64,000 bases of DNA from Vitrella brassicaformis CCMP3155 (GCA_001179505.1 CDMY01000227.1:496001-560000); one strand, 5' to 3'; numbered from the stretch's first letter, positions 27 to 7,853 are shown. Program-made: numbers and translations. Notes: generated by a model not told the origin, from the sequence alone.

Positions 27-3000
27 GCTGCCATCAAGGAGGCGCAGGCGCTCCCAGGCCGCACAGCGGAGGCTGTCACCAACGTCGCCACAGCGACGGC
101 AGGCGCAACCAAGAAGGTAAGCACCGGTCACAGATGCCGCATGACGCTGCAATGAACACCATGGCCAATGTGATGGATCCTAATGTGTCTGTATTGGTTG
201 GCCACGTGTGCAGGCTGCCCAGAATGCAGCCGACGAGGCTAAGCGCCGGGCCACTGAGGCCGCCGAGGAAACCAAGGACAGGTGGGGATGTGCCAGCCAA
301 CATCTGATTTGCCTCCCGTCATGCATGGTTGCCTCCCTGCCTGCAGGTTCTTCAATGCGGTTGACTACGTCCTCGAAACACCAACCAGAGTAACCAAACA
401 AGTCAAGGACGCACTCGGTAGGCCACGTGTGGCATGGCTTAACACGCAGCGGGCGGTACACAAACGGACATGCCCTCCCAATGTTTGGCCAGGTATTGAG
501 GAAGCTCCCAAGCCAGCGCCAAAGCCGAAGGCCCCTGCAGCCCCCAAGGCGGCGGCGCCAGGGAGGCCCCTTGACGTAGGGGCGCCTGCTGTGGGGGCAG
601 CGTTCGGTGGCGTCTTCGGCGGCGCACCGGAAGGGCCCAAACCTACGCCCGTCAAGACCAGAGTGGACGAGAAACCTCGACTGAACGGCAAGAAGGAACC
701 GGTACGCATACACCGCCTTCGGCTGTCGAGACTGGGTCAATCCTGCGCATCTTCGCCTGTTCTGCCTTTGCAGGTTGCCGTCGAACGGACTCCAGAGGGT
801 GTGATAATCGTCAAGAGCCCTGAGGCAGCCAAAAGGAAGCCGGCTGCTCCGCCAAAGCCGGCCAAGACCACAAAAAAGGTGAGTGACGCACGTGAAAGAT
901 GTTGTACTTTCTCGGTGGATGTGTCCCTTGCTTGTGTGTGCAGCTCTCTGTCACTCCGGTGGCAGAGGAGACGAGGCCGCCGCCCAGGAAGGAGGTCAAG
1001 AGGGGGCCGGCACCCGAGCCGGCGGTGACCGGAGGCCTCTTCACCGGCGTCTTTGGGGGAGCACCCACTACAGCAGAGAAGCCTGTCACTCCAGTGAAGC
1101 CTGCAGTTGAAGAGGAGATAATCTCAGCCCCGAAGGCACGCAAGGCCCCCACCGGCCAGCCACCTCGAGCGGCAGAAGTGAAGCCAACAGAGGTGTGCAG
1201 AAACCCTCGTGACAGAGTGGTGTGTGAAAGATAAGTGTCTGTCTGTTTCAGGCTCCTGTGCCCAAGGTTGCCCCCACTGCGGCGCCGACACCGACCAAAG
1301 TAAGACAACGAACCAGCGGGAAGGTCAACACATCCATCTACCTTCTCTATTCTCAGGCCCCAGCTGTCGGGAAGAAGGAAGCGCCCAAGGAAGAGGAGGG
1401 TGGACTCTTCGCGGGTCTCTTCGGCGGTGCGCCGGCCGCCCCCGTTTCCAAGCCGAAAGAGCAGCCGAAGCCCGCTCCAAGTCCCGCACTAGCCAAGGCT
1501 GTTGCAGTGGGCGAGGCGCCAACTGAGGCTCCCCCGAGACCCAAGACCTTCCAGGAGAAGCAGGACGCACTGCGGTCCATCCTGGCAGAGCCAGCACCAG
1601 TCAGGAAGGCGCCGCCAACTCCACCTGCAGTGACAGCTGCCAAGCCAAAAACCCCTGCGGCTCCCAAGGCCAAGGAAGTGACCAAGGTCGAGAATGTCAC
1701 ACCTGCTGGGGGCATCTTCGCTGGGCTCTTCGGCGGGGAGCCGCCCGCTCCCACGACACCCAAGGCGCAGCCAGCCAAGCCTGCTGCGGTGAAGCCCGCT
1801 GTCTCTCCAGCGCCGAAGGTAAGGATGGTGGATCACCAGTCACACCGATCGCGACACATTCTGAACACATTATCAGGTGTCTGCCCGTCCTGTTGCGAAA
1901 CCGTCGGCTCCTTCCGTTGGTGGCCTCCTTGGTGGCGCTGTGACTGAGGCCAAGAAGCCTGCTGCTGTGCAGAAGGAGGTCCGCAAGGTCACCCCGGCCC
2001 AGCCTGGATCCTTTGCTGCCCCCCAGGAGGTGGGACCCAAGGTCAGACGGCAGACATCGCGGCCGCCGTCGAGGACTACAGCAGCGCTCACGCCTCCGAA
2101 ACCAATCGTGGCGGTGAGTCAAACCATTGTGTCCGCGATCTTCGCGAAGTCACGAGATGGATTTGTTCTTGATGTTTTCAGGCTCCGTCTGCTGCTCCGA
2201 AGGTTGAGGCGCCCAAGGCGGTGGCTGCCAAGCCTGCAGTCAAGGTAGCTGCCAAGCCGACTGCACCTCCTGCAGCTGAGAAGGGCAAGGCAGCGCCGAC
2301 CGAGGCACCAGTGGCAGGTCTGTTCTCCGGCCTGTTCGGCGGCGCCCCGGCTGCTGCGCCCGTCAAACAGGCTCCTCCGGCAGAGAAGTTTGAGGTCAAG
2401 AAGCCGGCTGTCTCAGCTGCACCACCATCATACGCTGCCCCGATGGTACGCGATGCGAACACCACAACAGATGCGACTAACGTATCTGCTTGGTGTAGGA
2501 GATCGGACCGAAGCGACGAAAGACACAGGGGCGTCCCACGGTGGCCCTCATTGGCGGCGGTCCCACACCTGCACCAAAGCCCATTGTGAAAGCCCCGACA
2601 GCCGCGCCGAAGCCAGTGATGAAGAAGCCAGAAATCAAGAAACCGTCCCCACCAACGAAGGTTGTCACGCCCAGCAAGCCGAGCACACAGGAGGTGAGTT
2701 GTTGGCGATCCAACGAATGATCAGAGAAGTTGAAATGATGCGGCTTTCTTGGTGTCGTTTTGCAACACTCCCTCTGTCAGGTCTCTCCCCTCGGTGGTCT
2801 GTTCTCGGGTCTCTTCGGCTCGCCCCCGGCCGCTGCTGCGCCCAAGAAGACCCCTGCGACCCCCGTCAAGGCCGAGATCAAGAAGCCCGCCGCACCAAGC
2901 AGACCGGCGCCAACTGCCGCACCCAAGAAGGCGACGAGCGCGGCTGCCCCATCGGCGGCTGGTGGCATGTTTGCCGGGCTGTTTGGCGGGGCGCCAAGTA

Positions 3001-5011
3001 CGACGACGGCGGCCAAGAAGGAGGTCCGCAAGCCCGTGATGGCCACCAAGACGATCGCCAAGCCGCCACCTGCTGCACCGGTAAGTCAGAGAAGTGGATG
3101 GGCCAAGGTTGGTGAAGAGAATGATCCCTTGTCTGTGTGTCTGTTGTGGATGGTGTTGGTACCAATATCAGGCTGCTCGGAAGGCCCCGGCTCCCACTGC
3201 TGCGCCTGTGCGAGTGATCCCACGGACCCAGGCGAGCAGCACGCCAGTCAAGGTGCGCAAGCTGGGCTCATCTCAGCCGGTGGGCCTCGCGCGGCCGGCC
3301 GTCACATCGCCGCCCAAGCCCGCAGTCAAGGCAACTGCAGCCAAGCCCGCTGCTGCCCCTTCACCGGCAGTCGCCGTGCCCAGGACACTGCCCAAGGTCA
3401 AGGTGGAGGCGCCAGCAGCACCCAAGGCCTCGCGCATCGTCGCGACACCCACCGCGGCACCCAAGAAGACCCCTGCGGCACCAGCCAAGCCAGCAACGGT
3501 GGCTGCCAGCGCCAAGAAACCATCGCCAGCCGCTGCGCCGCCCTCGAGTGACATTGGGGGCCTGTTCAGCGGCCTGTTCGGTGGCGGCCCGACTGCTGCG
3601 CCCAAGCCACTGGTCAAGGCACCGCCTGCGAAGCCCCTCAAGCAGACGGTCGCCGCGACGGTCGACAAGACACGGCTGGCCAAGGCGGCCCCACCAGTGG
3701 CAGCCAAGAAGACAGAGATCAAGAAGCCGGTGACGCCCAGCAAGCCGAGCACACAGGAGGTGAGTCGTTAGTCATTGAGTGAGTGATCAGCGAACTTGAA
3801 ATGATGCGGCTTGCTTGGTGCCGTTTTGCAACGCTCCTTCTGTCAGGCCTCTCCCCTCGGTGGTCTGTTCTCGGGTCTCTTCGGCTCGCCCCCGGCCGCT
3901 GCTGCGCCCAAGAAGACCCCTGCGGCCCCCGTCAAGGCCGAGATCAAGAAGCCCGCCGCACCAAGCAGACCGGCGCCAACTGCCGCACCCAAGAAGCCAG
4001 TGACCACAGCAGCGAAGCCGACTATCGTGGCAACGCGGCCATCAGCCTCGTCATCGAGGACGAGTGACGCGGGAGGCTTGTTCAGCGGCATGTTCGGAGG
4101 TTCGCCATCGAGCAGCACCAAGTCCACGCCAACAAAGGCCGCTGCCCCGAAGGTGAGGGCAAATGCCCATGAGCTGGCGATCGTCCTACGTGTTAGCATG
4201 TTTGTACGTTGCTGTGTCTACAGGTGATTTCCCGGGGTCAGCTGCCGAGCGAGCCACAGGTCAAAGTCAGGAAGCTGAGGTCATCTGGAAGCAGAAGTAC
4301 CTCTTCCTCCGCTCCCAAGTCATCACCCCGTACACCATCCCGCCCCCCCGTCGCATCCGTCACCCCCCCAAGAGCACCCCAGCCTTCACCGCCGGCCAGG
4401 CCATCTCCACCACCCTCTAGCACACCATCTGGAGGGCTGTTCGGGGGCATGTTCGGCGGGGGATCCAAGCCAGCTGCCCCCAGGACCGCCCTAACAAAGC
4501 CTCCCGTGAAGCCACCTTCCGTCGCCGTCAAGGCCACACCACCACCGGTCAAGAGGAAACCGGAATCAAGTGGTGGAGGTGGATTGGGTAAGCTGGCTGG
4601 GCTGCTCGGTGGGGCGGTGTCGTCGGCGCCGAGCAAGCCAGCGGTGAGGAAGGATCCTGGTGCCGACAGCAGGCGGGCGGCGCTCAGTGGTGTGCTCAAC
4701 GGGGGCGGCCAGAGGCAGTCCAGCAGCAAGGGCAAGGACCTCGACGTGCTCGAGAAGAAGATACTCAGGATATACGAACAGTACCCGGTGAGGGGAGGGA
4801 GGCAACGACACGGGCAGTAGAGAGTCTACCAGTAGACAGACTCTCTATTGCATGGCGTCACGGTTAACTGTCTGCATTTCTGGTGCGTGTGTGTGACATT
4901 CAGTCGCTGAAGAAGGGGTACAATCCACTGGAGACCCCCGAGCAGATCCGCGCCGAGGCCGAGAGGATCAGGAAGCTCTTCCGGGAAGCCAACACACCGC
5001 TGCCTTTCTGA
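27..5011 (+). CDS. 5'-truncated, ~16-exon, ~1,300-aa Pro/Ala/Lys/Thr-rich repeat protein with recurring GG[LIM]FxG[LVM]FGG motifs and a short helical C-terminal domain; function unknown
   Basis: Hand-spliced exons with canonical GT-AG: ~27-116, 214-281, 347-417, 492-700, 773-878, 944-1191, 1252-1323, 1357-1818, 1877-2112, 2182-2444, 2499-2693, 2781-3080, 3172-3760, 3847-4152, 4224-4787, 4904-5011. The frame is continuous and ends DLDVLEKKILRIYEQYP|SLKKGYNPLETPEQIRAEAERIRKLFREANTPLPF* (TGA 5009-5011). Confidence 0.85.
2665..3986 (+). repeat. Intragenic duplication: ~2665-2930 and ~3733-3986 are near-identical copies of exon end + intron + next exon start
   Basis: Both copies read ..cccagcaagccgagcacacaggag|gtgagt..gaaatgatgcggctt..ctgtcag|g[tc]ctctcccctcggtggtctgttctcgggtctcttcggctcgcccccggccgctgctgcgcccaagaagacccctgcg..gcacccaagaag. 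The intron copies are also clearly homologous. Confidence 0.95.
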
Positions 5012-6420
5012 CTGACATAGCCACACGTAGATAGACCCGTAGAGCTCGATACACGAGCAGAAGCTGCAGGTCATCGCCCGAGAGAGAGAAAGAGGGACAA
5101 AGTCAGTCAGGGGGCAGCATTTTTCATGCGCGACCCGAACTGCAGAGAGGAGTGCCATCCATCCATCCATCCATTCATCCATTCGTGGATCCATCGCTGG
5201 CTGTGGCAGGCAGGGAGGCAGGGAGGCATGTACAGACGGGTGTTGATTTTTGGTTGGCTGGTGGCGGGGGAGGGCTGGGGAAGAAGCGGGTGTTACGGTG
5301 CGGCAAGAGAGTGAGTCGCATATTCATCCTTCGGGTATCCATCCCTTTTCGTTTCTGTTGGCGATCGCATCCATGGCTACCTTTCTGTCTGAGTGAGGGT
5401 CTTGTGTTGGGGGGGATTTTTCATGCGGCCAAGCGCACCCACCGCCGGCCGATCGATCAACGTGGGGCCTTGCTTTCTGGACAACCGTGCATATCGCATC
5501 GCATATCCATGAGTGCCTGTACATTCATTCCGCCACTGACTGACTGACTGATTGAGGGATTCCATTGGCTGAATGGCTGGCTGGCTGGCGAATGAATTGA
5601 GAGGGCAGGCAGTGTTTTTACGTACGTGAGAGTGAGGGCGAGAGTGAAAGGTGTGAGAGCATTCCATTTTTTCTCACAGAGCTGTGTGGCTGCGACTGTC
5701 TTGAGCGGCTATCTGGCTGCAATCATATGGATGCAATTGTGCGTGCAGGGGCACACTGACTGACACGTATGTATGCATCGACTGACAGACGTGGTAGGCC
5801 GAGGCCGAGTTTTTGCGTCCCTGCATCCGTGCAGTTTTGCTTTCCGCTAGATGAGATGTGTCGCGTGTGCGGCGATCGGGGCCCTTCCTTATCACTTGTA
5901 CGTGAGTGCACTGCACGTTTGTACGCCATTGGTGGCCAGACACACGGCTAGGTGGATGGCTTGCTGAGACGAGGCATGGTGGAAGGCTTGTTGCGCGTTG
6001 GATGGATGGGTGGAGTGTTGTCTACGTGAAGACCTCTGCGGCCATGTGCGTGTGTTGGTGCGCTGTGTGCCTGTCAACTCATTCATGAATCTGCTTCACA
6101 ATGACGCTCAAGGTTGACTCACCACGTCTGTCCATCGATCGACAGAAAAGCGCTACAGTGCAGTCAGCACACGAGACACCAGGAAGAAAGCAGCAAGGGC
6201 AGGCATAAAACAAATCGACGGAAAACTTTAGGGCCAGGGTCCCTTTTCGCCCCTTTCGGGCCCGTGAGTCTGACACACGAGAAGACCTTTTCCGCTCTAC
6301 ATAGTAGGGAAAAACACCATCGTTACCGTTTCTGTCTGCAGATGCCGCCTGGGGGCGTCTCGGCTGCGCTGGCCACTTGGGGGCCTCCTCATCTCTCGTG
6401 CTTGAGCTTATCGGTCTATC

Positions 6421-7853
6421 ATGATGCTGGTTGCCGTCCTGATCATCGCCGCTGTCCTTCCCTCCTCTTCAGGTGCCCGACAAGGCGCTCTTCCGCACTA
6501 TCGTTCGCGTGTCGAATGGTGTGTCGTGCACAGGCCATGCGCTGTGGGTGCCGTCCAACGGCACAGAGGCGGACACCGACAATAACATGTGCATGGCAGG
6601 CGCTTTCGACCAAAAACTCGCCACCGTCGAGTCAGACGTCCAAAGCGATGATTCAGAATGCTGCTGCGTCACAGACGATTGGCGGGAAGACATGCCCTGC
6701 GATGCGCGAAGACATTGCGAGGTGGGGGAGCTCATTTGTCACCTGCCACCAATTCCATTTGTGCCACTTATTCCATTTGTCCCACCGGATTATCAGCGGA
6801 ACGACGGAAAGCTCATCCCAGGGTCTTGCGCGGAGACGGCGAAAGAAGCGAAGGAGAAGAAGTGGCAGGACACCCACGGCAGTAACCCCCATTGCTGCGT
6901 GTTGGCGTCTGAGGCCGCCTGGAAAGGCGCCATGCGGATCATTTTGGGTTGGACCTTTCCCGCCTTCCATGGCGATGACTGGGAGGAACAGAAGCGACAG
7001 CACGAATACAAGAAATTGGTCGAGGGCGTTGGGCAGGGCGGTTTCTCGGCAAGTTGTTACCGCATCCATTCGGACTCGCTCACCGCATGCAAGGCTGAGA
7101 CCATGCACATGAAATCACAAGGTCTCTTCCTGTCCAACCAGTTCCTCAAGATGCCGCCTCTTGAACAGATGAAACGTGCCAAAGAGTCCTGTGACGTCTG
7201 GCCCTGCCGCGTAAGCGATGGCATGTCTTTGTGCTCAAACTCCAATCTGATGCATATGGGTATCTGCTTTCTCACTCAGGAAAAGAAGACTCTCAGACTG
7301 GAACATCCTCTCGTTAAAGACTTGACGCCGCGCAAGTTGACGGACTTGAAGCGAATCGCTCCAGACACGCGATACAGCTGTGCTGCCGATGCTACACGTA
7401 CGAGGCAACCGAGACATCACCATACATACATGCATGTTGTACATGATGGCCTGCTTGTATGCACTGTTCTTAGCTTGCCAGATAGACGGCCGTTGTCAGG
7501 AAGGTCTCGTGTGCGTGTCATCCCGCGCTCCCCAGGACGTAGAGGGCGTAGCCTACATTCTCAGCGATTCTTCGGAGCGGGACAAGCGGCAGCCATGCAT
7601 ACACAGCCGCATCGCTTGGCTCTCGGGCTTGGCCAAATCTACCCGCGCTGAAGCCGCCAACCTAGACACCACCGGCATCGTCAGGAACAGTGCGCTCTTC
7701 AAAGGTAGCAAGGAGAGGGAACAAAGACAAAGGCAACGAGAATTGGCGCCGCCAGTGCCACTTGCTTGGTGTGTGTCACCTCTTTGGCCCACCTCTTTCT
7801 CTCTCTCAGGGTGCCTGTGCTGCAAAGATACTCAGGCAGGCAACCGGCGCTAG
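6421..7853 (+). CDS. Secreted Cys-rich protein of unknown function (4 exons)
   Basis: ATG 6421 has an in-frame stop upstream and gives MMLVAVLIIAAVLPSSSG (signal peptide-like). An intron at ~6473-6534 joins it to the long ORF 6473-7651 (CCCVTDDW..PCD..HCEVGELIC..HCCVL..). Further exons lie at ~7481-7703 and ~7810-7853 (GCLCCKDTQAGNRR*). Confidence 0.65.

What the first reader, a model, noticed from the sequence alone, without database searches (positions are those of the whole stretch)
27..5011. Giant sticker-and-spacer protein with 11 GG[LIM]FxG[LVM]FGG motifs: candidate condensate scaffold, possibly an undescribed pyrenoid/Rubisco linker
Seen: the spliced protein repeats a Gly/aromatic motif at about 595 (AAFGGVFGG), 1033 (GGLFTGVFGG), 1399 (GGLFAGLFGG), 1708 (GGIFAGLFGG), 2314 (AGLFSGLFGG), 2793 (GGLFSGLFGS), 2960 (GGMFAGLFGG), 3558 (GGLFSGLFGG), 3858 (GGLFSGLFGS), 4072 (GGLFSGMFGG) and 4432 (GGLFGGMFGG). 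Degenerate copies lie near 1918, 2550 and 4597. Spacers are tens to ~100 aa, Pro/Ala/Lys/Thr-rich, basic and predicted disordered. The in-window N-terminal part is helical and LEA-like, and there is a short helical C-terminal domain. Established: multivalent short motifs with disordered spacers define pyrenoid linkers (Chlamydomonas EPYC1, diatom PYCO1), which are lineage-specific and non-homologous; GLFG motifs also drive Nup98-type FG phases; Vitrella has a pyrenoid and Form II Rubisco. Inference: this could be a chromerid Rubisco or thylakoid scaffold, a membrane-tethering protein with repeated amphipathic anchors, or an unusual FG-type phase-separating protein.
Basis: partly seen in the sequence, partly recalled or inferred. 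Interest (0 to 1): 0.85.

Follow-up and report, generated by a model that had tools for sequence, protein, structure and literature searches.

The report
Exported giant sticky-motif protein of Vitrella
The repeated Gly-Phe motifs are real and sit in an expressed 1,687-residue protein found only in the alga Vitrella, but its N-terminus sends it into the secretory pathway rather than the chloroplast interior, so it looks like a lipid- or membrane-coating scaffold and not a Rubisco (pyrenoid) glue.

Summary
Observation confirmed. Window 27-5011 (+) holds the last 16 exons of Vitrella brassicaformis CEL95434.1 (A0A0G4EHQ5, 1,687 aa, unnamed). Every intron is confirmed by spliced contigs. The protein has 10 strict copies of GG[LIM]FxG[LVM]FG[GS], one AAFGGVFGG variant and 3 degenerate copies. 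Spacers are 46-158 aa, Pro/Ala/Lys-rich and all net positive. No shuffle of 20,000 gave a single motif. Copies use different codons, so the motif is kept by selection.

The pyrenoid reading is not supported. The full N-terminus is a classic ER signal peptide (cleavage about SRA|E). The next 25 residues carry 8 acidic and no basic residues, the opposite of a stromal transit peptide. FG density (1.2 per 100 aa), highly basic spacers and the signal peptide argue against an FG nucleoporin.

New here: residues 279-477 form 18 uninterrupted 11-residue repeats (3.67 residues per turn, Pro-punctuated at 22/22/55). This is the lipid-binding 3-11 amphipathic helix type of apolipoproteins, synuclein, perilipins and LEA3. 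The motif has the same G-PhiPhi-xx-PhiPhi-GG pattern as the MinD membrane-targeting sequence.

Best reading, about 40%: an exported, polycationic, multivalent lipid- or membrane-surface scaffold. No homologue was found anywhere. The scan also noted this stretch in an overlapping window (s1-221950).

The parts
27..5011 (+). Last 16 exons (residues 401-1687) of V. brassicaformis gene CEL95434.1. The gene starts about 1.63 kb upstream of the window (L002 6001).
   Evidence: model; spliced contigs; identical to the annotated protein; genomic locus L002.
27..494 (+). Exons 1-3 and the first codon (split across the intron) of exon 4: tail (residues 401-477) of the 18 x 11-mer amphipathic-helix domain (residues 279-477).
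   Evidence: periodicity peak at 97.5-98 degrees with amplitude 1.19, against a maximum of 0.78 in 2,000 shuffles; helices at pLDDT 65-76.
598..624 (+). Motif copy 1, variant AAFGGVFGG.
1031..1060 (+). Motif copy 2, GGLFTGVFGG.
1399..1428 (+). Motif copy 3, GGLFAGLFGG.
1708..1737 (+). Motif copy 4, GGIFAGLFGG.
2314..2343 (+). Motif copy 5, AGLFSGLFGG.
2793..2822 (+). Motif copy 6, GGLFSGLFGS.
2961..2990 (+). Motif copy 7, GGMFAGLFGG.
3556..3585 (+). Motif copy 8, GGLFSGLFGG.
3859..3888 (+). Motif copy 9, GGLFSGLFGS (recent duplicate of copy 6).
4072..4101 (+). Motif copy 10, GGLFSGMFGG.
4431..4460 (+). Motif copy 11, GGLFGGMFGG.
4572..4619 (+). Degenerate copy GGGGLGKLAGLLGGAV (Leu for Phe). 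Further degenerate copies lie at about 1916-1942 (VGGLLGGAV) and 2541-2570 (VALIGGGPTP).
2657..2947 (+). Older copy of a 291-nt internal duplication that includes an 87-nt intron. Its partner is 3723-4013.
   Evidence: 90% identity overall, 83% in the intron, 94% in the 3' exon part.
3723..4013 (+). Second copy of the internal duplication.
4725..5008 (+). C-terminal helical hairpin domain (residues 1632-1650 and 1664-1680 of the full protein), split by the last intron (4788-4903).
   Evidence: pLDDT about 89 from the single sequence. No Pfam, PDB or fold match.
5012..5291 (+). 3' untranslated region, covered by the same spliced contigs at least to 5147-5291.
   Evidence: table 8 (X1 record 4, X2 record 7).

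Best explanation
The gene encodes a Vitrella-specific modular protein of 1,687 residues that enters the ER through a cleavable signal peptide. It probably works on the lumenal or extracellular side of a membrane or lipid surface, not in the plastid stroma. Its order is as follows. Residues 1-24 are the signal peptide. Residues 25-75 are acidic and 76-125 very basic, with an RQKR-type dibasic site. Residues 226-275 are a weakly hydrophobic Gly/Ala-rich pair of segments. Residues 279-477 are about 200 residues of Pro-punctuated 11-residue repeats. Residues 478-1600 are about 1,120 residues of polycationic Pro/Ala/Lys-rich disordered chain carrying eleven GG-Phi-F-x-G-Phi-F-GG motifs. The last about 55 residues form a helical hairpin. 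Proposed mechanism (inferred): the 11-mer domain folds into a 3-11 amphipathic helix on contact with lipid, as in exchangeable apolipoproteins, synuclein, perilipins and LEA3, and docks the protein. The Lys-rich spacers bind anionic head groups or other polyanions. Each short motif is a weak hydrophobic wedge with the PhiPhi-xx-PhiPhi-GG pattern of the MinD membrane-targeting sequence. Only together do the eleven motifs give strong attachment or self-association, so one molecule can coat or bridge surfaces over tens of nanometres, in the way myelin basic protein does with basic residues plus Phe. Shown: gene structure, expression, motif array, signal-peptide-like N-terminus, acidic post-signal region, 11-mer periodicity, absence of homologues. 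Inferred: cleavage, final location, lipid binding, and the role of the motifs.
For: The hydrophobic core of the signal peptide scores Kyte-Doolittle 2.04, with Arg-Arg before it and Ser/Ala at -3/-1. An mRNA contig (X1 record 1) extends about 1,300 nt upstream of the window. That fits 1,200 nt of upstream coding sequence plus about 100 nt of leader, so the signal peptide is on the same transcript (inference from coordinates). The upstream exons in L002 read through with GT-AG introns. The first 25 residues after the signal carry 8 acidic and 0 basic residues. This is incompatible with stromal transit peptides as described for complex red plastids (PMC12136025). Residues 279-477 keep one 11-residue register: periodicity 97.5-98 degrees, amplitude 1.19, 0 of 2,000 shuffles reach it, and Pro sits at 279/329/351/388/410/465. 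This helix type is lipid-dependent in apolipoproteins and synuclein (PMC5889406). The MinD targeting sequence is KGFLKRLFGG (PMC5471200), which has the same hydrophobic pattern as the motif. The same decapeptide recurs in exported bacterial proteins: seven L,D-transpeptidase-like ORFs carry a signal peptide, an Ala/Lys helix, one conserved SGGLFxGLFGG and a YkuD domain, with Pfam checked on one (PF03734, E 2e-19). It also occurs in a signal-peptide-bearing Gly/Ala/Pro/Lys-rich eukaryotic plankton protein. Motif copies differ at 57% of synonymous codon comparisons, so they are old and kept at the protein level. The basic-plus-Phe cohesion analogy rests on PMC3676292.
Against: No localisation data exist and no dedicated signal-peptide or topology predictor was available. 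The segment 257-275 (Kyte-Doolittle 1.21, slightly favourable on my hand calculation with the Wimley-White octanol scale) could be a real transmembrane helix, which would put the whole disordered region in the cytosol. The central Gly and the flanking Gly-Gly make the motif a poor helix, unlike the MinD sequence, which has Lys-Arg there. 11-residue periodicity with an Ala-rich face also fits a hendecad coiled coil. Pfam apolipoprotein, LEA and perilipin models do not match significantly (best E 2.1). The 13 [ST]Px[KR] and two KVRKLxSS sites would make more sense for a cytosolic or nuclear protein. In Vitrella the Phe at +1 is only weakly conserved (PMC6668581), and the charge rule was derived in diatoms.
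Confidence: 0.4

Rival explanations
1. Secreted structural protein of the cell or sporangium wall. The Lys/Pro/Ala-rich chain binds or is cross-linked to acidic wall polymers. The Gly-Phe motifs provide hydrophobic cohesion, as in elastomeric or proline-rich wall proteins (tropoelastin, abductin, Lys-rich arabinogalactan or proline-rich proteins).
For: Signal peptide. Pro+Ala+Ser+Thr is 53.5% in residues 478-1600, there is no Cys, and pI is 10.9. A plankton protein with a signal peptide and Gly/Ala/Pro/Lys-rich repeats carries the same KKGGLFGGLFGGKK element (L044/L052). From my own knowledge: abductin repeats are Gly/Met/Phe decapeptides, and Vitrella builds thick laminated walls.
Against: The motifs occupy only about 10% of the chain, unlike elastomers. 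The 200-residue 11-mer amphipathic domain points to lipid rather than polysaccharide. There are no Tyr or Cys cross-linking motifs and no wall proteome. Hydroxyproline glycosylation is not known in this lineage (own knowledge).
Confidence: 0.2
2. Type I membrane protein. After signal-peptide cleavage, residues 257-275 span the membrane and the whole disordered region faces the cytosol or nucleoplasm. There it tethers an organelle, or acts as a membrane-anchored FG-type protein, by analogy with vertebrate POM121 or with inner-nuclear-membrane proteins that have long basic linkers.
For: An uncharged 50-residue Gly/Ala/Val/Leu-rich stretch (226-275) is followed by a net positive flank, as the positive-inside rule expects. 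There are 13 CDK-type [ST]Px[KR] sites, basophilic KVRKLxSS sites and NLS-like PKRRK and VKRKP patches. GLFG-like cores are present.
Against: The hydrophobicity of 257-275 (1.21) is no higher than that of the motif segments themselves (1.23-1.24) and is well below the signal peptide (2.04). A hand sum on the Hessa scale is about +5 kcal/mol, which is unfavourable. If both hydrophobic segments insert, the region is lumenal again. FG density is 1.16 per 100 aa with +121 net charge, unlike FG domains. A separate Nup98-like GLFG gene was noted elsewhere in this genome (s1-201669, unchecked).
Confidence: 0.2
3. One reading: a plastid scaffold, namely a Form II Rubisco/pyrenoid linker or a thylakoid-binding protein.
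For: High pI, disorder, regularly recurring stickers and a signal peptide, which is the first half of a bipartite presequence. Phe at +1 is not strictly needed in Vitrella (PMC6668581). A metagenomic ORF (L016) with five GGGLFGGLFGGGG copies starts with an Ala/Arg-rich, acid-free stretch that looks like a green-algal organelle presequence.
Against: The post-signal region has net charge about -8 over 25 residues, against the requirement for positive charge. The 46-158 aa irregular spacers and 1,687-aa size differ from EPYC1 and PYCO1. There is no Rubisco-binding evidence. Another plastid-targeted five-helix candidate linker was noted elsewhere in this genome (s1-201628, unchecked).
Confidence: 0.05

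Closest known systems
Exchangeable apolipoproteins, alpha-synuclein, perilipins and group 3 LEA proteins (11-mer repeat, 3-11 amphipathic helices)
   Same: About 200 residues in one 11-residue register at 3.67 residues per turn, with a weakly hydrophobic Ala-rich face and Pro punctuation at 22/22/55. Like the apolipoproteins, it has an N-terminal signal peptide followed by a possible pro-region.
   Different: There is no significant sequence match to the Pfam Apolipoprotein, LEA or perilipin models. The domain is fused to an 1,100-residue polycationic motif array, which none of these families has.
MinD membrane-targeting sequence (KGFLKRLFGG)
   Same: A ten-residue G-PhiPhi-xx-PhiPhi-GG pattern. 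It is individually weak, so membrane binding depends on the number of copies.
   Different: The Vitrella motif is internal and repeated eleven times, with a small residue plus Gly in place of Lys-Arg in the centre. The basic charge sits in the spacers. It probably lies on the lumenal or extracellular side.
Myelin basic protein
   Same: A very basic disordered protein in which charge neutralisation on membranes plus Phe-mediated hydrophobic contacts give a cohesive membrane-gluing meshwork (PMC3676292).
   Different: Myelin basic protein is small (about 18 kDa), cytosolic, and has no defined repeated motif. There is no homology.
Pyrenoid linkers EPYC1 and PYCO1
   Same: Sticker-and-spacer design, high pI, lineage-specific, no homologues.
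   Different: Those are stromal with proper presequences, have near-identical tandem repeats of about 60 aa, and have proven Rubisco-binding stickers (helix or KWSP). Here the presequence test fails, the spacers are irregular and binding is unknown.
GLFG nucleoporins (Nup98 type) and the membrane-anchored FG protein POM121
   Same: An LFG core with Gly flanks in a long disordered chain.
   Different: About five-fold lower FG density, strongly basic Pro/Ala/Lys spacers instead of polar uncharged ones, a signal peptide, and no pore-anchoring domain.

Membership tests
Pyrenoid Rubisco linker (functional class: EPYC1, PYCO1) | Targeting to the plastid stroma (bipartite signal: signal peptide plus a positively charged, acid-poor transit peptide) | tested here: not met
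   A signal peptide is present, but the next 25 residues have 8 acidic and 0 basic residues, with Glu at +1. The criterion comes from PMC12136025. No dedicated predictor was run.
Pyrenoid Rubisco linker (functional class: EPYC1, PYCO1) | Disordered, high-pI chain with regularly repeated sticker motifs | tested here: met
   11 motifs, pI 10.9, spacers 46-158 aa. The spacing is irregular compared with EPYC1.
Pyrenoid Rubisco linker (functional class: EPYC1, PYCO1) | Stickers bind Rubisco and the pair phase-separates | not testable with these tools
   This needs in vitro demixing with Vitrella Form II Rubisco, or a complex model.
FG nucleoporins (GLFG type) | Dense FG repeats (several per 100 aa) with short polar, largely uncharged spacers | tested here: not met
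   1.16 FG per 100 aa; spacers 46-158 aa; net charge +121.
FG nucleoporins (GLFG type) | A pore-anchoring folded domain or coiled coil, and no ER signal peptide | tested here: not met
   No Pfam domain. A signal-peptide-like N-terminus is present.
11-mer repeat amphipathic-helix lipid binders (apolipoprotein, synuclein, perilipin, LEA3) | Sustained 11-residue (3.67 per turn) hydrophobic periodicity over many repeats | tested here: met
   Amplitude 1.19 at 97.5-98 degrees over residues 279-477; 0 of 2,000 shuffles reach it.
11-mer repeat amphipathic-helix lipid binders (apolipoprotein, synuclein, perilipin, LEA3) | Sequence membership in one of the homologous families | tested here: not met
   Pfam Apolipoprotein gave E 2.1 and there were no LEA or perilipin hits. 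No PDB sequence hit. Fold hits were non-specific long-helix proteins with TM-score of about 0.2 or less.
11-mer repeat amphipathic-helix lipid binders (apolipoprotein, synuclein, perilipin, LEA3) | Lipid-induced folding and binding | not testable with these tools
   This needs circular dichroism and flotation assays with liposomes or oil droplets.
MinD-type membrane-targeting sequence | A short PhiPhi-xx-PhiPhi-GG amphipathic segment next to basic residues | tested here: inconclusive
   The hydrophobic pattern matches KGFLKRLFGG. However, the centre is a small residue plus Gly, and the position is internal rather than C-terminal.
Arabinogalactan or proline-rich wall proteins | A signal peptide plus more than 50% Pro+Ala+Ser+Thr | tested here: met
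   53.5% in residues 478-1600, with a signal peptide. This composition rule was defined for plants. Glycosylation, a GPI signal and homology are absent or untestable.

The most novel reading that the evidence does not exclude
A lumenal membrane zipper. This exported polycationic chain has an apolipoprotein-like docking domain and eleven MinD-like hydrophobic wedges. It would glue two closely apposed membranes from the lumenal side, for example keeping cortical alveoli flat or holding the outer pair of the four plastid membranes together. That would make it a protist analogue of myelin basic protein working inside the endomembrane system.
Probability: 0.1. Interest if true: 0.75.

Novelty: new variant of a known kind. 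Interest (0 to 1): 0.35.

Why it matters
If the best reading holds, the protein joins two known membrane-binding devices in one exported polypeptide: a long 11-mer amphipathic helix and an array of MinD-like hydrophobic decapeptides on a polycationic chain. That would be a new way to coat or bridge membranes in alveolates, whose flattened alveoli and four-membrane plastids have almost no known lumenal structural proteins. The result also removes this gene from the list of candidate Form II Rubisco linkers, which remain unknown for chromerids and dinoflagellates. The decapeptide also recurs in unrelated exported bacterial enzymes and plankton proteins, so it may be a general, undescribed short linear motif worth testing once. 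As it stands, this is an orphan protein with an inferred function, not a discovery.

Tried and rejected
- **Pfam:** searches of all large exons, the N-terminal 490 residues and the C-terminal domain gave nothing significant.
- **HMMER against representatives:** exon 15 (188 aa) against 1.84 billion representatives matched only its own cluster.
- **Word-indexed homology searches:** residues 1-490 and the two-motif region 1060-1150 gave no hit. Both are limited to proteins of 928-2,952 aa.
- **ESM Atlas feature searches:** three searches gave no usable hit.
- **PDB sequence searches:** nothing.
- **Foldseek:** both single-sequence AlphaFold models gave only non-specific helical matches. The N-terminal model is low confidence (pLDDT 54).
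- **J-domain idea for the C-terminal hairpin:** rejected, because there is no Pfam hit and no HPD.
- **gamma-ear, FGDF, LIR and clathrin-box readings of the motif:** considered from memory and dropped, because the motif lacks the required acidic context or residues.
- **Histone H1-like reading of the spacers:** dropped, because Lys is 11% rather than about 40%.
- **Literature:** a search for the accession numbers gave no paper. The supplements of the chromerid localisation study do not list the protein.
- **L016 (second motif-array ORF):** no Pfam domain and no homologues.
- **Rfam on 5000-6600:** nothing.
- **L014:** this contig is labelled as a human-gut metagenome contig. It was returned by the pattern scan and I left it out of all scripts.

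Full report
**1. What is in the sequence**

Window 27-5011 on the + strand is the 3' three quarters of a spliced eukaryotic gene. Sixteen exons with GT-AG introns give one open frame of 1,287 codons ending at TGA 5009-5011.

Contigs of runs X1, X2 and X7 skip the introns at these borders. Fourteen joints are listed, and the fifteenth (3760-3846) is seen in record 6 of X2. The DNA-like run X3 is colinear with the genome. The gene is therefore transcribed and spliced as modelled. The runs' RNA status is only a guess of the index, but intron-less contigs with GT..AG borders can only come from spliced RNA.

All exons from the fifth onward are multiples of three. Every intron in the repeat region is therefore phase 0, a layout that tolerates exon duplication.

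**2. Identity**

HMMER of exon 15 against 1.84 billion representatives matched one cluster only. Its members are a 536-aa transcript fragment, a 103-aa fragment, and CEL95434.1 / A0A0G4EHQ5, an unnamed 1,687-aa protein of Vitrella brassicaformis CCMP3155.

My model equals its residues 401-1687 exactly. The genomic locus (L002, contig CDMY01000227.1) places the start codon about 1.63 kb upstream of the window. The upstream exons read through with GT-AG introns.

One mRNA contig (X1 record 1) reaches about 1,300 nt upstream of the first in-window exon. That fits 1,200 nt of coding sequence plus about 100 nt of leader (this is an inference from coordinates).

**3.

- There are ten strict copies of [GA]G[LIM]FxG[LVM]FG[GS], at window 1031, 1399, 1708, 2314, 2793, 2961, 3556, 3859, 4072 and 4431.
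- One variant, AAFGGVFGG, lies at about 598.
- 22 of the 29 Phe residues of the in-window part sit in the motifs.
- None of 20,000 shuffles of the protein contained even one core motif.
- Spacers are 46-158 aa, 19-24% Pro, and each is net positive. Residues 478-1600 have net charge +121, pI 10.9 and 53.5% Pro+Ala+Ser+Thr. The whole protein has no Cys.

At the DNA level the copies are only 60-87% alike. 57% of codon pairs that encode the same residue use different codons. The array is therefore old and kept at the protein level. The exception is one recent 291-nt duplication that includes an intron (2657-2947 and 3723-4013; 90% identity).

Secondary recurring elements exist as well. S[FY]AAPxE[VI]GPK[VR]R occurs twice and KVRKLxSS occurs twice.

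**4. The N-terminus changes the reading**

The full protein starts with Arg-Arg, a 14-15-residue hydrophobic core (Kyte-Doolittle 2.04) and Ser-Arg-Ala before the likely cleavage site.

The next 25 residues contain 8 acidic and no basic residues. Residues 25-75 have net charge -11, and Glu rather than Phe sits at +1.

For complex red plastids, the ASAFind 2.0 paper reports that the first 15 transit-peptide positions are almost devoid of negative charges. It also reports that positive net charge is required for stromal import (PMC12136025). In Vitrella the +1 Phe is only weakly conserved (PMC6668581), so the charge pattern carries the argument, not the missing Phe.

I therefore rate a pyrenoid or stromal role at about 5%. 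Caveats: the charge rule was derived in diatoms, and no dedicated predictor could be run here.

**5. Other parts of the protein**

*Residues 76-125.* They are very basic (+11) and include an RQKR-type dibasic site.

*Residues 226-275.* They form an almost uncharged Gly/Ala-rich pair of segments. Their Kyte-Doolittle scores are 1.0-1.2, which is no higher than the motif segments themselves. By hand, the Hessa scale gives about +5 kcal/mol (unfavourable) and the Wimley-White octanol scale about -1.8 (marginal) for 257-275. The stretch may be no transmembrane segment, a hairpin, or one span. Only the last option puts the disordered region in the cytosol.

*Residues 279-477.* The in-window helical LEA-like part is the tail of this domain. 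The domain is a single uninterrupted register of 18 eleven-residue repeats. The hydrophobicity spectrum has one sharp peak at 97.5-98 degrees (3.67 residues per turn) with amplitude 1.19, against a maximum of 0.78 in 2,000 shuffles. Prolines lie at 279, 329, 351, 388, 410 and 465, giving gaps of 22, 22 and 55. AlphaFold models long helices here at pLDDT 65-76.

Eleven-mer repeats forming a 3-11 helix are the lipid-dependent amphipathic helices of apolipoproteins, alpha-synuclein and perilipins (PMC5889406). There is no sequence membership in those families, and fold matches are non-specific. A hendecad coiled coil is the alternative reading of the same periodicity.

*The last about 55 residues.* They form a confident helical hairpin (pLDDT about 89) with no sequence or fold relative.

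**6. The motif elsewhere**

The MinD membrane-targeting sequence KGFLKRLFGG (PMC5471200) shares the G-PhiPhi-xx-PhiPhi-GG pattern.

Among them:

- Seven soil-bacterial ORFs that look like L,D-transpeptidases. Each has a signal peptide, an Ala/Lys-rich helix, one conserved SGGLF[ADS]GLFGG and a YkuD-type catalytic motif. Pfam was checked on one of them (PF03734, E 2e-19).
- DUF4388 proteins with KKGGLFGGLFGG in a linker.
- Plankton proteins with a signal peptide and Gly/Ala/Pro/Lys-rich repeats that carry KKGGLFGGLFGGKK.
- One 74%-GC ORF (L016) with five GGGLFGGLFGGGG copies separated by Ala/Lys/Glu/Arg-rich spacers.

The decapeptide is thus a recurrent, probably convergent element, often in exported proteins and next to Lys. 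Only the Vitrella protein and L016 carry it as a widely spaced array.

**7. Homologues**

None were found by any route. The limits are these. Two searches see only proteins of 928-2,952 aa. The exhaustive search covered only exon 15. The protein is an orphan as far as these tools can see. No paper mentions its accessions.

**8. Interpretation**

Best reading, about 40%: an exported, polycationic, multivalent scaffold for lipid or membrane surfaces. The 11-mer helix docks on lipid, the Lys-rich spacers bind anionic surfaces, and eleven weak hydrophobic wedges add avidity or cohesion. This parallels the way basic charge plus Phe contacts let myelin basic protein glue membranes (PMC3676292).

Rivals:

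- A secreted wall or matrix protein (about 20%).
- A type I membrane protein with a cytosolic or nucleoplasmic disordered region, possibly FG-like in the manner of POM121 (about 20%). The CDK-type and NLS-like patches favour this one; the weak hydrophobicity of the candidate span counts against it.
- The pyrenoid or thylakoid idea (about 5%).

The remainder is open.

Other notes of this scan, none of which I checked:

- s1-201628 describes a plastid-targeted five-helix candidate linker in the same genome.
- s1-201669 describes a true Nup98-like GLFG module in the same genome.
- s1-221950 is this same stretch, noted in an overlapping window.

**9. Verdict**

The feature is real and the anatomy is now much clearer, but the headline interpretation is not supported. 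The function remains inferred. It is a new variant of known design principles in an orphan protein, and the interest is moderate.

Noticed in passing
L016:4789-9024 (minus strand), metagenome contig Ga0209491_10001591: An intron-less 1,411-aa ORF in 74%-GC DNA. It has an Ala/Arg-rich, acid-free N-terminus that looks like an organelle presequence. It carries five GGGLFG[GA]LFGGGG motifs separated by Ala/Lys/Glu/Arg-rich, coiled-coil-like spacers. This is a second, unrelated sticker-and-spacer protein using the same decapeptide. It has no Pfam domain and no homologues.
   Followed up: partly
L003, L027, L039, L048, L068, L092, L110 (soil metagenome contigs): A family of ORFs that look like bacterial L,D-transpeptidases. 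The order is signal peptide, Ala/Lys-rich helix, one conserved SGGLF[ADS]GLFGG decapeptide, then the catalytic domain. Pfam was checked on one member (L048: YkuD, E 2e-19). DUF4388 proteins (L094, L112, L117, L024) carry KKGGLFGGLFGG in a linker. The decapeptide may be an undescribed short linear motif.
   Followed up: partly
window 5150-5900: Just after the 3' UTR lie tetranucleotide tracts: (CCAT)7 at 5155-5182, (GGCA)6 at 5205-5228, (ACTG)5 at 5535-5555 and (TGGC)6 at 5566-5589. Many contigs break here with unrelated continuations, so this looks like dispersed repeats. 5189-5900 has several-fold higher contig depth in the RNA-like runs than the gene itself. There is no Rfam match.
   Followed up: partly
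window 774-4787: Eleven consecutive exons (exons 5-15) have lengths divisible by three, so all introns in the repeat region are phase 0. In the upstream 11-mer domain several introns fall right after the Pro-Gly that punctuates the helices. Both features suggest growth by exon duplication.
   Followed up: no
L002:5975-6003 (upstream of the window): A 6-codon upstream ORF (MMKQLP) ends with its stop overlapping an in-frame ATG two codons before the annotated start. The signal peptide is the same with either start.
   Followed up: no
window 2850-2955 and 3547-3572: The base differences in the RNA contigs at these places lie in or next to the 291-nt internal duplication. They probably reflect cross-assembly of the two copies, or alleles, rather than editing. 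The transcript fragment P0001 likewise reads GGLFSALFGG and QEVSPL where the genome has GGLFSGLFGG and QEASPL.
   Followed up: no
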